Source: Phallusia mammillata
Taxonomy: Eukaryota
Reading direction: 5' to 3'
Assembly: GCA_965637545.1 (NCBI GenBank)
Contig: OZ281494.1
Location: 6,262,001 to 6,326,000, forward strand
Length of the DNA stretch: 64,000 nucleotides
Both the position numbers and the translations under genes were made by a program. Shown one piece after another: positions 2,191-40,326 of this stretch. The notes beneath the pieces are model-generated. The model was not told the origin of the DNA. It ran no database searches and was given only the letters and a program-made list of their open reading frames with translations. The first letter of the stretch is position 1, and every line of letters begins with the position of its first letter.

Positions 2191-5100
2191 CACGACTGTA
2201 GGCGATCATTATTGACATCACTAAATAAAATAAACGCGTACTAACTTCAAATGATTAAAATATCGACATGGCAGAGCACGGGCCCAGGCAAAACTCCTCT
2301 CGTGGGTTCGGATCTCTCCGCATGCGAGATTTTTGTAGCTTATGTCTTATGCGAAAGCTTGGTGACCGGCTGATTCAGTACAATGCCTGTCATAGGCCTG
2401 GCAACACTGCAAACCTTCAAGGAAAAAGGAAGAAACATGCAGCACCAACCGGCAATGCATCTCATGTTCTCAGCTACTGTTTCTTCTTATCGCTAACAGG
2501 TATAGATAAATAAGTGAAGTGGATAAAGAATTTTTGGAACTTTAGCAGGCACATGTTCGGATAACGATCGACCCAGAATTTAATGCTTCATAAGACTGAG
2601 CTTTATGCAAAAGTTGAAAAAATATTTTCCTGTCTTTTTCATTACTACAAAGACAAACAATAAAACACAGTTAATGGGAAATAAATGTACTTTCGATCTT
2701 ACCTGAAAATCAGAACATTCAGAGCGATTTTAAGCTGATCCTTCGAGATCTTGTCAACTAACCCGTGTTTAAAACATCTTTACCTGTTCATGCGTTCTGT
2801 GTGACACATAAATAAGCAGCAACATACCACAGAGACATTCTCCTAACTCTAAACTGTAAAGTGGCATGATTTTGCCCGGTACCAGCGATTTAATGGCTCC
2901 CTTTCTCTGCTCTACTGCGATTAACCTGTTCTTATCTCGTCAAGTGCCTTTGCGTTTAAACGTTCGATACTTTACTTGCTTTGTATAGAGTTGGTCTAAT
3001 ATGTCATGATAAATATCAAGGCTTATATAATATGAGATCAATTTGATCTGGTTGTAATTGGGTAGTTTTTCTTCAAAATCGGTTGTGACGAGCCTAGCAG
3101 AAAGACAGATGCCAAGAAAGCAGGTGAATAGCGAAAATTTAGGTTTTTTGTAGCATAGCTCTCTTTAAGATTTGGTCAGGTTAAGATAAAATAGTACAAA
3201 ACTGAGGAAAAGAATGTAAAGGCTGATGAATGTACTTTTGTGGATTATTTTTGATCAGTGCTGTGTAAAATAGAATCTACTTTAAAAATGAATTTCCATA
3301 AATAATTTTCCAATTAGTTGTGCGAAAATTGTGCTAGGCAAATTGCAACTTACAAGGTATAACATGCACATGCAAGTGTGGGGGCTTTTAAATCAGTTTA
3401 ACCCCAAATGTTGAAACGTACGAACATATAGTTTAAGTATGTGAAAGGTAAATCGTAATAAACAATGTTCGAACGTGTTGATTGTGCAAAGAAGTATTTT
3501 CTAACAACCTACTTAAACTGTCTGCGCATTTAAAACAACGTTTTTACACGGTAAATACTTTGTTTGACAATGCGCCTGCACGAAAAAGGCTAGATATCCA
3601 AAAATGATATGCGTCAGAAACGTGGCAGGTAGCTGTGTATCGCATTTCGTCCGGAATGTCACCAGGCCGGTATTATGCAGCAACGAAAAATTTTAAATTC
3701 GTGTTTTTATTAAGCCTATACCAGCAGAATATCCTTGACTAAGAAAAACTGTGCAGTTCCAAAAAATGCATTTATTGTGTTTTATTAATAACTTCAACGC
3801 TTTACGGTGTATAACATTATAATTCGTTTTAGAAAACAGTCCAACATCTGATTCATTTTCATAGGATCAAGTAAAATGTATAAAAAATACGTTTATAGTG
3901 CGATTTCAGTTCGCTAAATGTTCGGAATCTTTGTTTTTATCGGTAGGCTACGTTTCTTTCCTAGGCGTGTCTGCCATTTTGTTTCAAACCGTTTCCTCAT
4001 TTTTATTCCTTTGTCATTTGTTTGGATATAAACGAGTGAATTTTATCAAATATGCATAATTATCAACGTACTATTTAACACATAACATACGAAATTGGAC
4101 AATCGACATTTTTTGCATATTTGTGCGATGCGAATTGTAGAACAAGTGTGGTAGTCCAGCAAAACAAATCATTTCTTTCTTATCTCTATGGCCCACTAGC
4201 GGAAGACATTTTATGTGGCAACGTTATTAACAATTCTATAGACATTGAAAGGTTAATCTCAATTTCAATGTTCCTATGGCGTAATTGTAAACCAAACAAA
4301 TAACAAATGTGGGTGTAGGTTTGCTTTGTTAATAAAATACCTCACTATAACAATTAAACGCGCTGCTGCATTGTTGTACAACTTCGCACAAATTACAGCC
4401 TGATTGAATAGGGCATAATGCAACCACAGGTAAAAAACTTAATTGCCTCTGACATGGTTGTCAAGTCATTAAGATAATGTTCATTTGGTACATTGTCTAT
4501 AATTTAGTCTCTAAACAGCCAAGCGACTATTGTTGAAAACAACAGAACAAACTATTTTGACGAATAGCTTTTTTCATTTTAAACCACCACAAACCAACCG
4601 ATTTTGTGAGCAACAGCTTTGAGGTCCACGCCATGTTTGAAAGGTTGAAGTTTTCTACCAACGTAGGTAGAACAGTGGGAAATTAAATGAGGTTAAATCG
4701 TAACCTATGTTACATACTGGATGATTTTATTTTCCTAAGATAAGTTAGATAAAATAATTGCTTGGTACATGATTTTTAACAAGTAGGCTAGCTGGTAGTA
4801 AAAACGATGAACTTTTGCACTTTTATTTTAAATCAGCAAGTTTAAAGTGTTTGAAAGTTTACGCAAACGACCTTTCCTTACCTATTGCTGTGATTCACTA
4901 TAATCTCGTGGCAATTCAAAGTGAAGGCATTCAAAGTATGAGTCACAGAAACCTAGAGTAAAAAAGCCACACGACAATAAGTTCAACGGAGGTTTACAGT
5001 AGGTTACCAGGTGCTTAAAACCACTTCCACAGTGGAATGCAGTCTTTTGTTAAACAGTTTATTCACTGCTCTTTGGTGATAAAAATTGTAAGGAGAAAAC

Positions 5101-5417
5101 ATTGTGAAAGTTGCTGTACGAATGTTTTCATTTATTGAAACTTTTATCCTATGTATCAAGTTTAATTTAAAATCGTTTTCTGAAACAATGATGTACATAC
5201 AGCTCTAAGCGATCCTGAACATGTATGCACCACAGCAGTCACAAGTGTACATAGGGATACACCAAAAATGTTGCATGCGTAATTAATTGTAGTAGATGTT
5301 GAATAAAATACGTACCACCACATTTGCGTTCACACTTTTATTTTACGTCTGTGCATCGGTTATAAAGGGTAAATCAGAGGAAAATGTTGGGCTAAACATC
5401 ATTGGTCTACTCTAAAC

Positions 5418-5969
5418 CAGTGTTACCTAACCGGGGGGAATTTACTTTAATTTGCACATTTTAAATGATCGTTGTATGGTTTAGCATCTACCATGTGGTA
5501 TATTAGGAAGAAATAAAATGTTTGGGACTGTTAACAGTGGCGTAGGAGCATATGCTGCCGCCCCTGGTTTTCGTTGAAAATGCCGCCCTACGTAGACTGC
5601 AGCAATTTTTGAAATAGTTTCATGTTCAAGCAATCTCTTCAATAAAAATAATTACAAATAATGTGCCGCGTCTCAGAAGTTCTACATTGCTCGTGAAAGA
5701 AGCCTCACTGTCTCAGCGTTAAGGCCAAAAATAAAAGACAAAAAATGGAGAACAAATGTATTAGGCAAATAAAAGATCAATAGCCGCCTCAAAATTGAAC
5801 TTTTCGAGCTTTCGTCGAAGCAAAATCAGGGACAACTTTTATCCAGAAGTGTCCCCTTAAGTCATTTTGCCGCCCCCTTGCAGCCTGCCGCAGAGCCAGA
5901 ACCGCCAAGTGGCTGCTACGCCACTGACTGTTAAGGGAGGATTTTGTCGAAAAAGGTTGGGAACTTCTG
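5418..5969. mobile_element. hAT-type MITE (outer element of a nested pair)
   Basis: Imperfect TIRs CAGTGTTACCTAACC / GGTTGGGAACTTCTG. Flanking 8-mers ctctaaac (5410-5417) and atctaaac (5970-5977) match 7/8. An 8-bp TSD with CAG...CTG ends is the hAT signature. Confidence 0.75.
5535..5926. mobile_element. hAT-type MITE (inner element)
   Basis: Perfect 11-bp TIR CAGTGGCGTAG / CTACGCCACTG. Perfect 8-bp TSD actgttaa (5527-5534, 5927-5934). Subterminal GCCGCCCC motifs. Confidence 0.9.
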
Positions 5970-8900
5970 ATCTAAACAACTGGATTTAAAAGATAAAAAG
6001 GCCTTTGTGTCAATTAACCACTTCGTCTACTTTCGATTGACTCAACCAATTTTTGTTTGTTTCTCCTAACCCTTCACTTGTCAGGGATTGATCCTTCCCA
6101 CATCAACAAAGATTTTTGGTGTAGATAAGCAAAACTGACTCACACTTGTTAGTTTCGATCTTTCACATTTGTCATCGAGCAAGTAACTTGAAAACCAAGC
6201 TAAAACGCTTACCTTCACGCCGTTTTAACAGAAGATTTTGAACACAGATTATGTGCTTTTGAACAGTTAGTATGACAACGCAATATTTTTTTGATTTGCG
6301 AGTATTGTACGACCGGTATATTGTTTATATTGTGTTGGCCGCGCAATCTTTAAAAGTTTGGTTTTGTTTAAGTCAGAATCTTTAGCAACGAATTTTCGAA
6401 TCTGTTTTTTATTAACTTTAAAACTATAAAACACAATGGAAATGTTGTCCCATTGCCAAATAAATAGACTTAGATAGTTATATGTACTGTACAGCAGCAA
6501 TATTTTAACGTCAAAACGTTGTGCAGTATGAAAAGTTAAAACGTTTGTAAAAACATATCCTACTTTAGAATGTTCAATATCGCCTATATAAACAGAACGA
6601 TTTTCCTAAAGTCATGACAAGTGAGTACAAGTCAAACTGTTTCACTAGAGTTCCTCTGCACATAAACATTTCCCGTAAAAACATACCACAACGTGCTAAG
6701 GTAATCTGGTTTCATAATCCCAAGCGGGTCGTCTGGTAAGAAGAAAGGTCTAAGCAAGATATCAAATTGCTTACAAAAAAAACTACCCGGTACCCTTGTG
6801 ATTATAAGTTTTTGTTGTTGTTATCTTTAAAGGCACTTTTGAAGTTTCAAGTAAGGTTTATAATTTCGTCTGTATTTGTGTTAGAAACGCATTGGAAAAT
6901 ATCTTTAAAATATTGTGTACATTTGCAACTTGCAATGTGTTTAGACTTGCATACCAATTTTTTGAACTTTATTAAAACTGACTCTAAAATGTATAAATGT
7001 CGTATTTTATCCTTGTAACGCGCGCCCATTACTAAAAATCGATAACAACATCCATATAATCCAAATTCCAACAATTATGAAAGGACGATGTCGTAACGGC
7101 GGAAAGGTCAAATATAGATTCGAAATCCATGCGTGTTTTGTTGTGCTGGTAACAAACAGCGTGAGCATTTCGGAAGACTGTAAAATGTGGACCTTATTAG
7201 TTAGCTTGTTTGTTTCATTTGAATAGTATATGAGGGCTTACTGGTTATTTTAAAAACTAATCTAAAAGTTCGTTGCCAATTGTGGCTTTGTGGGTAAAAT
7301 ACAACAAAGTTTTAGGACCGCTTTTGTAAGCTATAAGTAACCAAGAGTGAAAAAGAAACAAAAAGTTTGAGCAAACGTTTGCATTTTGCATGATATAAAC
7401 AGCAACTCTTGCGTAACAAGGGTCAATGGTAAAACCAGAAAAGTAAGAAACGAAGGTAATCGTATTAAAAACCGCTTACGCCAGGGGTTGAACCGTCAAC
7501 CCTCTTTCAACCCGGGAAATACCGCCAGTACTCGGAAATCTGCTGAAAATCATGAGCGGAACGAAAGGTGAAAGGTCAGGAGATGTTTACCGCAACGAGG
7601 TGAGATGATCGGAAGATAATTGGTCACAGAATCCAGCGTACACGGGAGAAAATACTTTGCTACAAAACCCGAATCGTTAGGGGCGAGATACACCAGCTTT
7701 GCGCTTAAGCGTCGACCCTGCGATTTGAGATCTTGCATGCAAATGATCAGGGCAAATCTTTAGCCAAACGAGCCGGAAAATTGTCAGATACGCCAGATTT
7801 GGGAGCAATAAGAGAAACTGGGTCATCGATATGTTTTATCAGTAACAGTTTCTTGATAGATTTCAACGGATTGTACTGTTATGCAATGAGTTCCATAATG
7901 AACTGAATAAAACATTCTCTGATGTTTTTCGCTTGATATAAAACGACACAGTCTGTGTGTCACACAGACCATGTTTAAACAATCATTGTTTATGGTCTTT
8001 TAACAGGCCAGTGTTTGTGCCAATGGCTTGTTTTAGCGAAAAGCGTAAAATACATGTGACTTTTTTTTGGCTGCATTGACTATAATTATTAAGATATACT
8101 TTGTAACTGTTTCTAACGTATACGCAGCATTGGTTTTAAAATGTGGTTTACAAGCTACCAAAGAATTCCTTTAAATCCAATAAAGAATATTGTATTCGTC
8201 TAACAATTACATCCTCGGGGAGTTTAAGTTCGACATGCTTTCGACATGAGCACCATTCTTGAAACAGAACAAACCTTGGCATCAACTTGCGCCCTGGATA
8301 ACATTATTAATATGCAATAGGATAAGGTATAGTTATTTATTTAAAGCTAAACCAACTCTGTATGAAGCGTAATGCAATTGCTGTGTTGTTAAATGCCACA
8401 ACCAAGCCGCGATTTTGCACAAAACCATGCTAACCGCTGCCACAAAGAGAAAGGTCTTTGCATCCGTATTTCATGACTTACATTGTGATCCCATTAAATA
8501 TCGTTGAAGCTTGTTTTAATACGTCAGGGACCGGTGTAATTTCATCGTCTAGGAAGGATTCGAATGTCCGTGTTTGGTTTAAAGTCACTCATTTTGGCTA
8601 ATTTACCGACAGGAATTCATTAGTGCGATGATATTCCTTTATGGGAAAGTAAAATGCTAAGCCAAACATTTTTAACATTTATTGTTGTCGTTCTTTCTGC
8701 TAATATCGACGTAATAATACTTTTAAGTCACATAACTTTTCAAGCTAAAAATGCTTGTTGCTTTCGTTTAGAAACAGAAGTTGCTGAAAAACAATCACAC
8801 TTCATTCATTTAAATAAACCTTGCTGCGTCGAAATATTTTTGTGCAAGATCTTTTTTGTCAGCTATGGAGTAAAAGCAACCGTCAAATCAGCTTGAAAAT

Positions 8901-39317: not shown

Positions 39318-40326
39318 ATGCGTTACGTGGCTGCGTACCTTCTGGCTGCCCTTGGAGGCAATGAAAGCCCTTCTTCAAGTGATATCAAAAACATTCTTGG
39401 AAGTGTCGGCATTGACTGTGATGATGACAAACTTGACAGAGTTATGTCAGAACTGAAGGGAAAGAATTTGGAAGAAGTCATTGCTGCAGGTAATTAAGGC
39501 TATTAAAACAAAGCAGAAATTCACATTTCACAAAATGTCACTGACATCTGTGAATACAGTAACAGTGCTTCCCAAAATATTTTGTGAAGATTTTACTTAC
39601 CTCTTGTGGAACTATGTCCTAACCAAATATTATTAGAGAATAAGGTATTAAAAAAACATTTGGAAATCCTGCTACATGGGTTACAGCGAGGCCACATTGA
39701 AATGGCTTAGGTGTACAGTCACCACAAACACTAGTTTTCTGGTGCCACACATGGTCATTGCTTTCCAACCTGCTATTTACATGCCAATGATGAAAAAAAT
39801 TCACCATCTTTCGACTGATTGATTGTGATGTTTCTTCACTTTGACCTGAGGCATGTCATGCATTTTAACATTATCAAGCAACACAAGATTCTTTGCTTTA
39901 ACATAATAATCAAACATTTGTTTTTTGTCTATTAAGGTAATGAAAAGCTTGCCAGTGTGCCCTCTGGTGGTGGTGCAGTTGCGGCCAGCGGTGGCGGAGG
40001 AGAAGCCAAAGCTGAAGGTTTGTGTTGTTTGTTGATCACTGTTTGACTTTACCCTCCTTGATTCTTACCCAGTGACTGTTTAAATTCACTCTCACTCACT
40101 GTATTTACCTGGAGGAAAATTAATGCTGCTTTTGTGATTCTTTTCACTGTGTAGTGAAAATGTCACAACTGCCACATGTTTTTTGTTGTAATAGTTTGTA
40201 AATATATTGCAATTGTAAATTACCTAAAACTGTATTGTTGGTGTTTGAGCAGAAAAGAAAGAAGAGGTTAAAGAAGAATCTGAGGAAGAGTCTGATGATG
40301 ACATGGGTTTCGGATTGTTCGATTAA
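39318..40326 (+). CDS. RPLP2: 60S acidic ribosomal protein P2 (108 aa)
   Basis: Exons 39318-39489, 39937-40017, 40253-40326. MRYVAAYLLAALGGNESPS... and the universal P-protein tail EESDDDMGFGLFD*. AATAAA at 40354. Confidence 0.98.
39782..39853 (+). ncRNA. Intronic box C/D snoRNA with two rRNA guides
   Basis: C box ATGATGA 39787-39793, D' CTGA 39815-39818, C'-like GTGATGT 39825-39831, D box CTGA 39846-39849. Terminal stem catgcc/ggcatg. Guides TTCACCATCTTTCG (14 nt) and TTTCTTCACTTTGAC (15 nt) are complementary to conserved 28S segments CGAAAGAUGGUGAA and GUCAAAGUGAAGAAA (recalled). Confidence 0.92.
40052..40179 (+). ncRNA. Probable intronic box H/ACA snoRNA
   Basis: Hairpin 1: cctcc/ggagg base, cagtga/tcactg upper stem, internal pocket. 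H box AAATTA 40117-40122, 15 nt from the upper stem. Hairpin 2: ttgtga/tcacaa and ttttcac/gtgaaaa. ACA at 40174-40176 plus 3 nt. About 128 nt long, ending 73 nt before the 3' splice site. Confidence 0.6.

What the first reader, a model, noticed from the sequence alone, without database searches (positions are those of the whole stretch)
39782..39853. Double-guide C/D snoRNA in an RPLP2 intron combining two 28S targets that vertebrates and yeast split between different snoRNAs
Seen: complete C, D', C', D boxes, a terminal stem and two long antisense elements, with the D box 87 nt from the 3' splice site. Knowledge (recalled): the D' guide pairs with 28S CGAAAGAUGGUGAA, and the fifth-nucleotide rule selects the second A after G, equivalent to yeast 25S Am807 (snR39/snR59) and human Am1511 (SNORD32/SNORD51). 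The D guide pairs with GUCAAAGUGAAGAAA and selects the equivalent of yeast Am2220 (snR47) and human Am3703 (SNORD36C). Inference: I know of no snoRNA carrying this guide pair, and vertebrates host those guides in other genes, so this may be a lineage-specific chimeric snoRNA in a new host.
Basis: partly seen in the sequence, partly recalled or inferred. Interest (0 to 1): 0.72.

Follow-up and report, generated by a model that had tools for sequence, protein, structure and literature searches.

The report
Ascidian double-guide snoRNA in RPLP2 intron

Summary
Window 39779-39856 (+) is a canonical box C/D snoRNA in intron 2 of RPLP2, with C, D', C' and D boxes and a 7-bp terminal stem. The genome is Phallusia mammillata: the exons are 100% identical to its P2 protein.

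- **D' guide:** pairs 14 nt with the species' own 28S rRNA and selects A1024.
- **D guide:** pairs 15-16 nt and selects A2495. This is the vertebrate U37 (SNORD37) site, human A3697. It is not the U36C/snR47 site (A3703/A2220), which lies 6 nt downstream and has its own SNORD36 homologue in RPL7A in this genome.
- **Conservation:** Ciona intestinalis has one copy and Clavelina lepadiformis two, all in RPLP2 introns and all with both guides unchanged. Only the snoRNA is conserved within the intron.
- **Host age:** a starfish carries a snoRNA with the same D' guide in the orthologous intron, but with an orphan D guide. The host is therefore old, and only the second guide is ascidian-specific so far.
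- **Databases:** no Rfam family holds both guides.

Verdict: a new member of a known kind, of modest interest. Expression and methylation are untested.

The parts
39779..39856 (+). Whole box C/D snoRNA including the 7-bp terminal stem (core 39782-39853, about 72-78 nt)
   Evidence: Sequence. Full-length sub-threshold matches to many C/D families. Covariance model R1 scores 105.6 bits and finds a single copy in the genome.
39779..39785 (+). 5' arm of the terminal stem (ACAUGCC)
   Evidence: Pairs with 39850-39856. Across 7 homologues all 7 pairs show compensatory changes, 95.9% of cells are paired, and 0 of 500 shuffles reach this.
39787..39793 (+). C box AUGAUGA
   Evidence: UGAUGA is invariant in all 7 homologues; the first box base is A or G.
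39800..39814 (+). D' antisense element. 39800-39813 form 14 Watson-Crick bp with own 28S; position 5 upstream of D' lies opposite 28S A1024.
   Evidence: Invariant in the four ascidian copies. The CACCAUCUUUCG core is invariant in all seven homologues, including the starfish and a Logan contig of unknown taxon.
39815..39818 (+). D' box CUGA
39825..39831 (+). C' box GUGAUGU
   Evidence: GUGAUG is invariant in the four ascidian copies.
39830..39845 (+). D antisense element. 39831-39845 form 15 Watson-Crick bp and 39830 a G-U pair with own 28S; position 5 upstream of D lies opposite 28S A2495.
   Evidence: Identical to the Rfam SNORD37 consensus guide in the same box register. Conserved in Ciona and Clavelina.
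39846..39849 (+). D box CUGA
   Evidence: Invariant in all homologues.
39850..39856 (+). 3' arm of the terminal stem (GGCAUGU)
39490..39936 (+). Host intron 2 of RPLP2 (447 nt, GT...AG). The D box ends 87 nt before the 3' splice site.
   Evidence: Exon borders from tblastn of the P. mammillata P2 protein and the sequence. Only intron positions 279-367 align to the Ciona and Clavelina loci.
39317..39489 (+). RPLP2 exon 2 (ATG at 39318; codons 1-57 plus the first base of codon 58)
   Evidence: 100% identity to P. mammillata P2 residues 1-57.
39937..40017 (+). RPLP2 exon 3
   Evidence: tblastn gives 100% over residues 58-73. The remainder and the borders are read from the sequence.
40253..40326 (+). 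RPLP2 exon 4 coding part, ending MGFGLFD and a stop codon

Best explanation
This is an intron-encoded box C/D snoRNA of Phallusia mammillata, single copy, in intron 2 of the ribosomal protein gene RPLP2.

**How it most likely works.** After splicing, the intron is debranched and trimmed by exonucleases down to the RNA protected by the core box C/D proteins (Snu13/15.5K, Nop56, Nop58, fibrillarin). These assemble on the C/D motif, clamped by the terminal stem, and on the internal C'/D' motif. Fibrillarin then methylates the 2'-OH of the rRNA nucleotide opposite the fifth guide position upstream of each D-type box.
- The D' guide directs methylation of 28S A1024, the site served by U51/U32A in vertebrates and snR39/snR59 in yeast.
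- The D guide directs methylation of 28S A2495, the site served by U37/SNORD37 in vertebrates (human A3697).

**Shown:** the anatomy, perfect pairing with the species' own 28S, uniqueness in the genome, conservation of boxes and guides but not spacers or intron in three ascidian genera, and covariation of the terminal stem.

**Inferred:** expression, processing, protein binding and the two methylations.

**Evolutionary reading (inferred).** A snoRNA carrying the A1024-type D' guide already sat in RPLP2 intron 2 in an early deuterostome. The U37-type guide occupies its 3' guide slot in Phlebobranchia and Aplousobranchia, the two ascidian orders sampled here. Vertebrates carry that guide in the 5' slot of a separate snoRNA in EEF2.
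For: - **Anatomy:** boxes, stem and spacing. More than 50 C/D families give full-length sub-threshold matches, the best being RF00535 snoMe28S-Am982 at 36.5 bits with the D' guide aligned.
- **Own rDNA:** 28S is at L009 3212-6897. The D' target CGAAAGAUGGUGAA is at L009 4232-4245. The D target is at L009 5702-5716, and this 15-mer occurs 289 times in the genome, 288 in the rDNA arrays and once as the snoRNA itself.
- **Target scan:** 14 Watson-Crick bp to A1024 and 15 Watson-Crick bp plus G-U to A2495.
- **Target identities:** SNORD37 consensus and SNORD37 to A3697. Chicken table: U37 at A3207, U36C/snR47 at A3213, U32A/B/U51/snR39/snR59 at A1459. U32A D' guide to A1511.
- **Redundancy:** no second locus in the genome carries either guide next to a D-type box with a C box upstream.
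- **Orthologues:** Ciona intestinalis RPLP2 intron 2 and Clavelina lepadiformis introns 1 and 2, all with both guides. Only the snoRNA part of the intron is alignable.
- **Stem:** compensatory change at 7 of 7 pairs.
- **Position:** the D box is 87 nt from the 3' splice site, in the range I recall as typical for intronic C/D snoRNAs (Hirose and Steitz 2001, from memory).
Against:
- The C' box departs from consensus at its last base (U for A).
- Position 1 of the D' guide is mismatched, which is common and tolerated.
- In Ciona and the starfish the snoRNA lies about 280-355 nt from the 3' splice site, so the distance in Phallusia is not conserved.
- Five other RPLP2 contigs of unknown taxa have intron 2 covered and no such snoRNA, so the location is not universal.
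- The uniqueness searches needed near-exact guides and an NTGA-type box. A redundant guide with a more degenerate box could have been missed.
Confidence: 0.85

Rival explanations
1. One reading: the D guide is the SNORD36C/snR47 guide and selects the equivalent of human Am3703 and yeast Am2220.
For: The D guide duplex (28S GUCAAAGUGAAGAAA) physically covers the U36C/snR47 nucleotide, which lies 6 nt downstream of the selected A within the same duplex.
Against: The fifth-nucleotide rule puts the target at the second A of GUCAAAG (A2495), not the second A of GUGAAG (A2501). The guide and box register equal the SNORD37 consensus, not the SNORD36 consensus. Chicken U37 and U36C sites are 6 nt apart. 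This genome has its own SNORD36 homologue, whose D' guide selects A2501, in an RPL7A intron.
Confidence: 0.02
2. The RNA is real, but only one of the two guides directs methylation. The other is conserved for a different reason, for example a chaperone-like base pairing with pre-rRNA or a non-rRNA target.
For: Many C/D snoRNAs use only one guide. The starfish and the SRR25569784 homologues have no rRNA match for their D guide. An internal hairpin between the two guide regions is predicted, with a weak z-score of -2.1.
Against: Both guides are perfect 14-15-nt matches in the correct register to sites that are methylated in vertebrates. Both are invariant in four ascidian copies while the spacers vary. 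Both adjoin good boxes, and no other guide for either site was found in the genome.
Confidence: 0.1
3. It is a decaying or chance snoRNA-like sequence with no function.
For: It scores below every Rfam gathering threshold, and no expression data exist.
Against: It is conserved at 86-91% identity over the snoRNA alone, within otherwise unalignable introns, across three ascidian genera. The stem shows compensatory changes. Boxes and guides are perfect. The sub-threshold Rfam scores follow from the unusual guide combination, since each half matches a different family.
Confidence: 0.02

Closest known systems
snoMe28S-Am982 (Rfam RF00535), clan CL00054; functional counterparts are vertebrate SNORD51/SNORD32A, yeast snR39/snR59 and plant U51
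   Same: It has the same D' (5') antisense element in the same register, and so the same target adenosine (human A1511, yeast A807, chicken A1459). It has the same overall C-D'-C'-D layout and is intronic in a translation-related host gene. It is the best full-length Rfam match (36.5 bits here, 38-40 bits in the orthologues).
   Different: It scores below the gathering threshold of 49 bits. Its 3' guide differs from all of them: U32A pairs the A1511 guide with an 18S G1328 guide. The host differs too: RPLP2 here, against EEF1B2 for chicken U51. That human U32A sits in RPL13A is recalled from memory.
SNORD37 / U37 (Rfam RF00440), in an EEF2 intron in vertebrates
   Same: The antisense element UUCUUCACUUUGAC directly abuts CUGA, identically, and so selects the same target (human 28S A3697, chicken A3207).
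   Different: In SNORD37 the guide sits in the 5' half, upstream of D'. Here it sits in the 3' half, upstream of D. The rest of the RNA does not align (19 bits against a gathering score of 45). The host gene is different. The chicken table lists no yeast or plant homologue for U37.
   Same: It targets the same 28S helix region, and its duplex overlaps that of the candidate.
   Different: The selected nucleotide is 6 nt downstream, with a different guide sequence and register. This genome has a separate SNORD36 homologue next to a SNORD24 homologue in RPL7A.
Asterias rubens RPLP2 intron snoRNAs (found here; best Rfam match SNORD96 at 34.5-35.6 bits, below threshold)
   Same: They lie in the orthologous host intron (after the codon for ...IAxG). 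They have the same D' guide core CACCAUCUUUCG in the same register, and a terminal stem with compensatory changes.
   Different: The D' box is AUGA. The D guide has no rRNA match longer than 9-10 bp. There are two copies.

Membership tests
Box C/D snoRNA (2'-O-methylation guide class) | C box RUGAUGA near the 5' end and D box CUGA near the 3' end, brought together by a short terminal stem | tested here: met
   AUGAUGA at 39787-39793, CUGA at 39846-39849, and a 7-bp stem 39779-85/39850-56. The stem covaries in 7 homologues.
Box C/D snoRNA (2'-O-methylation guide class) | Internal D' and C' boxes separated by a short loop | tested here: met
   CUGA at 39815-18 and GUGAUGU at 39825-31, with a 6-nt spacer. 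Both are conserved in the four ascidian copies, with spacers of 6-9 nt.
Box C/D snoRNA (2'-O-methylation guide class) | An antisense element of at least 10 nt abutting D or D' and complementary to rRNA, with the fifth position opposite a known methylated nucleotide | tested here: met
   14 bp to 28S A1024 and 15-16 bp to A2495 of the species' own rDNA. Both sites are guided in vertebrates.
Box C/D snoRNA (2'-O-methylation guide class) | A stable small RNA bound by fibrillarin, Nop56, Nop58 and Snu13, with the target actually methylated | not testable with these tools
   No small-RNA, IP or RiboMeth data were available.
Rfam RF00535 snoMe28S-Am982 (clan CL00054) | Score at or above the family gathering threshold (49 bits) | tested here: not met
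   36.5 bits in Phallusia, 38.6 in Ciona and 38.1 in Clavelina. Only the 5' half with the D' guide aligns well.
Rfam RF00535 snoMe28S-Am982 (clan CL00054) | D' guide to the Am982/Am1511/Am807 site | tested here: met
   UUCACCAUCUUUCGA followed by CUGA aligns to the family consensus and selects the second A after G.
Rfam RF00440 SNORD37 | Score at or above the gathering threshold (45 bits), with the guide in the 5' (D') position | tested here: not met
   19 bits. Only the guide plus box aligns, and here it lies upstream of the D box, not D'. No SNORD37 hit over threshold anywhere in the genome.
   The candidate's guide selects the A 6 nt upstream. SNORD36 did not appear among the Rfam matches to the candidate at E up to 10, although 11 lower-scoring same-clan matches were left out of that list.

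The most novel reading that the evidence does not exclude
2'-O-methylation of the U37 site (human 28S A3697), which the chicken comparative table lists without a yeast or plant counterpart, would predate vertebrates. Its guide would have changed carrier during chordate evolution. In ascidians it fills the 3' slot of an ancient RPLP2-intron snoRNA whose 5' guide serves the A1511 site. In vertebrates it fills the 5' slot of a separate EEF2-intron snoRNA. This would be a clean, datable case of one guide function being re-housed, or re-invented, in a different snoRNA backbone and host gene while the rRNA modification stays put.
Probability: 0.35. Interest if true: 0.4.

Novelty: new member of a known kind. 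Interest (0 to 1): 0.3.

Why it matters
Tunicate snoRNAs have hardly been catalogued. One survey found only 12-24 families per species and asked whether the rest were lost or had diverged beyond recognition (PMC5006418). This locus is a concrete example of the second answer: a perfectly good, conserved snoRNA that fails every Rfam threshold only because its two guides belong to two different families.

It also predicts two specific methylated adenosines in ascidian 28S rRNA. It suggests that the U37-site modification is older than vertebrates. And it shows that RPLP2 intron 2 is an old deuterostome host for the A1511-site guide, whereas in chicken that intron is listed as hosting an H/ACA snoRNA, ACA52.

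Reshuffling of guide functions between snoRNAs is already a recognised phenomenon (PMC2653536). The result therefore refines annotation and evolutionary history rather than revealing a new mechanism.

Tried and rejected
- **Rfam at gathering thresholds over the whole window:** no match. This is not evidence against a snoRNA, because each half matches a different family below threshold.
- **Exact search for the full 15-nt D' target in the genome:** found only the snoRNA itself. The reason is that position 1 of the guide is mismatched; the 14-nt target is present in 28S.
- **First rDNA unit fetched (L008):** it lacked the D' target because it is a truncated unit at the edge of the array. Full units were used instead.
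- **Metagenome scan for the guide pair:** 0 hits. This is uninformative, because few animal genomes are in that collection.
- **Second genomic matches to the D guide plus box:** one exact and six with one mismatch. None has a C box upstream, and their number equals the reversed-pattern control, so they are chance.
- **SNORD37 and RF00535 family searches over the genome:** no other convincing locus. The weak RF00535 and R1 hits on contig 3 proved to be snR39B-type snoRNAs for the neighbouring G1022.
- **Other RPLP2 introns of the window:** no further snoRNA at E up to 1. A weak mir-802 match at 39888-39953 is taken as chance.
- **Literature searches for tunicate SNORD37 or for this guide pair:** nothing found.
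- **Taxa of the anonymous contigs** (ENA, JGI, Logan SRR25569784): could not be determined.
- **Spliced protein:** Exon 2 was searched by reference as its natural open frame, and the database protein was compared with the window exon by exon.
- **Human sequence:** no fetched contig looked human.

Full report
**1. Observation**

The + strand of window 39779-39856 carries every element of a box C/D snoRNA:
- 5' stem arm ACAUGCC, 39779-85
- C box AUGAUGA, 39787-93
- a 15-nt antisense element, 39800-14, abutting a D' box CUGA, 39815-18
- a 6-nt loop
- C' box GUGAUGU, 39825-31
- a second antisense element, 39830-45, abutting the D box CUGA, 39846-49
- 3' stem arm GGCAUGU, 39850-56

RNAfold pairs the two arms. 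Rfam gives no match at gathering thresholds. In E-value mode more than 50 C/D families align end to end over exactly these coordinates. The best is snoMe28S-Am982 at 36.5 bits against a threshold of 49, with its D' guide aligned letter for letter.

**2. Host gene and organism**

The flanking exons encode ribosomal protein P2. The natural open frame over exon 2 (window:39306-39494) is 100% identical to UniRef 'Large ribosomal subunit protein P2, Phallusia mammillata' (P0001). tblastn of that protein finds exons 2, 3 and 4 at 100% in the window.

Intron 2 runs 39490-39936 (447 nt). A YNYURAY match (CUUUAAC, 39896-39902) lies about 50 nt downstream of the D box. Reading it as the branch site is inference only.

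**3. Targets in the species' own rRNA**

The rDNA array is on contig 6, with 288 copies of the D-target 15-mer there. A complete unit, L009, has 18S at 614-2437, 5.8S at 2739-2892 and 28S at 3212-6897.

| Guide | Pairing with own 28S | Position in L009 | Selected nucleotide |
|---|---|---|---|
| D' | 14 Watson-Crick bp (guide positions 2-15) with CGAAAGAUGGUGAA | 4232-4245 | A4235 = 28S A1024, the second A after the G |
| D | 15 Watson-Crick bp plus one G-U with GUCAAAGUGAAGAAA | 5702-5716 | A5706 = 28S A2495 |

A scan of both guides against all three rRNAs found next-best matches of only 9-10 Watson-Crick bp.

**4. Which known sites are these?**

*D' target.* In the comparative table of the chicken snoRNA paper (PMC2653536), Gm at 28S-1457 (snR39b) and Am at 28S-1459 (snR39/snR59, plant U51, human U32A/B/U51) are the G and the second A of this motif. 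Human U32A uses its D' guide for 28S A1511.

- The Rfam SNORD37 consensus reads UUCUUCACUUUGAC followed directly by CUGA. That is the same sequence in the same register as the candidate's D guide.
- SNORD37/U37, hosted in EEF2, targets human 28S A3697.
- The SNORD36 consensus guide, GAAUUUCUUCAC followed by CUGA, selects the second A of GUGAAG, 6 nt downstream.
- In chicken the two sites are A3207 (U37) and A3213 (U36C/snR47), also 6 nt apart.
- The same table lists no yeast or plant homologue for U37.

This genome also has its own SNORD36 homologue, whose D' guide selects A2501. It lies beside a SNORD24 homologue in introns of RPL7A, the vertebrate host of both. A group of snR39B-type snoRNAs on contig 3 serves G1022.

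**5. Uniqueness in the genome**

I searched 240 Mb for each guide next to a D-type box, exact and with one mismatch, and with a relaxed NTGA box.
- The D' guide matched only this locus.
- The D guide gave a handful of extra matches, no more than the reversed-pattern control. None has a C box within 110 nt upstream.
- A covariance model of the snoRNA finds one strong copy at 105.6 bits.

As far as these searches can see, this RNA is the only guide for both sites.

**6. Conservation**

Using the P2 hits I fetched RPLP2 loci from other genomes.

| Source | Position of snoRNA | D' guide | D guide |
|---|---|---|---|
| Ciona intestinalis (L033) | intron 2, 3635-3712 | same | same (U37 type) |
| Clavelina lepadiformis (L034) | intron 1, 2851-2930 | same | same (U37 type); position 1 is A, mismatched to the target |
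| Clavelina lepadiformis (L034) | intron 2, 3349-3428 | same | same (U37 type) |
| Asterias rubens (L042) | orthologous intron 2, 3486-3575 | same core and register, D' box AUGA | no rRNA match beyond 9-10 bp |
| Asterias rubens (L042) | upstream of the ATG, 2055-2144 | same core and register, D' box AUGA | no rRNA match beyond 9-10 bp |
| Logan contig SRR25569784 (L043, unknown taxon) | intron 2, 2240-2321 | same | different, no rRNA match |

- In the four ascidian copies the boxes and both guides are invariant, apart from position 1 of the D guide in the Clavelina intron-1 copy, while the linker after the C box and the D'-C' loop differ.
- blastn of the whole Phallusia intron against these loci aligns only intron positions 279-367, which is the snoRNA.
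- Five further anonymous contigs have intron 2 covered but no such snoRNA.
- Over the seven homologues, all 7 pairs of the terminal stem show compensatory changes. 95.9% of cells are paired, 0 of 500 shuffles reach this, and the slid controls give 24-55%.

**7. Mechanism**

This is inferred from the established box C/D paradigm. The RNA is released from the spliced RPLP2 intron, trimmed to the stem, and packaged with Snu13, Nop56, Nop58 and fibrillarin. It base-pairs with pre-28S rRNA through either guide. Fibrillarin methylates the nucleotide opposite guide position 5, giving Am1024 and Am2495. Hosting in a ribosomal protein gene with a pyrimidine-rich 5' exon would couple its supply to ribosome production. 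None of these steps was observed here.

**8. Comparison and novelty**

Functionally, the RNA is the U51/U32A/snR39/snR59 guide and the U37 guide in one molecule. It fails the Rfam thresholds of both families, and no Rfam family holds both guides.

A survey of tunicate non-coding RNAs lists a 'snoMe28S-Am982' family in Ciona. It also remarks that tunicate snoRNAs have not been studied systematically (PMC5006418). That annotation may be this locus; I could not check.

Guide recombination between lineages is a known phenomenon (PMC2653536), and the A1511 guide already has different partners in different lineages. I therefore rate this a new member of a known kind. The useful points are three:
- the corrected target identity;
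- the evidence that the U37 site is guided outside vertebrates;
- the old age of RPLP2 intron 2 as host of the A1511-site guide.

**9. Limits**

- There are no expression or methylation data.
- The taxa of several comparison contigs are unknown.
- No amphioxus, hemichordate or identified stolidobranch genome could be examined, so the time of origin of the guide pair is open.
The chicken numbers, A3697 and A3703 are from the cited papers.

Noticed in passing
L020 1244-1318 and 1501-1566 (G000:C6, about 11,280,157-11,280,479): SNORD24 (56 bits) and SNORD36 (33 bits) homologues lie in neighbouring introns of a gene whose ORF fragments read as RPL7A. This is the same host and pairing as in vertebrates. 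The SNORD36 D' guide selects 28S A2501, the U36C/snR47 site.
   Followed up: partly
L017, L019 and L047 (G000:C3, about 805.9 kb, 845.1 kb and 846.7 kb, minus strand): Three C/D snoRNAs carry the D' guide UUACCAUCUUUCGGG. In two near-identical copies it is followed by A and CUGA and pairs 15-16 nt with 28S to select G1022, the snR39B-type site 2 nt 5' of the candidate's A1024. In the third it is followed by G and a CAGA box, and no target was computed for that copy. The two near-identical copies are about 39 kb apart.
   Followed up: partly
L021 1501-1567, minus strand (G000:C5:3929594-3929660): A second SNORD36-family match (31 bits, just over threshold). Its 3' guide region resembles the family's 18S-directed guide. 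Its target was not worked out.
   Followed up: no
L008 (G000:C6:21624500-21634499); rDNA array on C6 from about 21.63 Mb to beyond 22.68 Mb: The rDNA array has units of 7.5-7.9 kb in blocks of both orientations. The unit at its edge is truncated: 28S sequence begins near L008 5270 (Rfam places the match from model position 665), preceded by AT-rich non-ribosomal DNA.
   Followed up: partly
L042 2055-2144 and 3486-3575 (Asterias rubens RPLP2 locus): Two copies of a C/D snoRNA carry the A1511-site D' guide, a variant D' box AUGA, and a D guide with no rRNA complementarity beyond 9-10 bp. The best Rfam match is SNORD96 at 34.5-35.6 bits, below its threshold of 43.
   Followed up: partly
L034 2851-2930 (Clavelina lepadiformis, upstream of the RPLP2 start codon): A second copy of the double-guide snoRNA lies about 77 nt before exon 2, presumably in the 5'-UTR intron. 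Position 1 of its D guide has changed and its stem has one G-U pair. This points to a duplication within the host gene in this lineage.
   Followed up: partly
window 38200-38330, minus strand, against 38520-38606, plus strand: A divergently oriented gene start seems to lie roughly 200-300 bp upstream of the presumed pyrimidine-rich first exon of RPLP2, suggesting a shared bidirectional promoter region. It was not examined.
   Followed up: no
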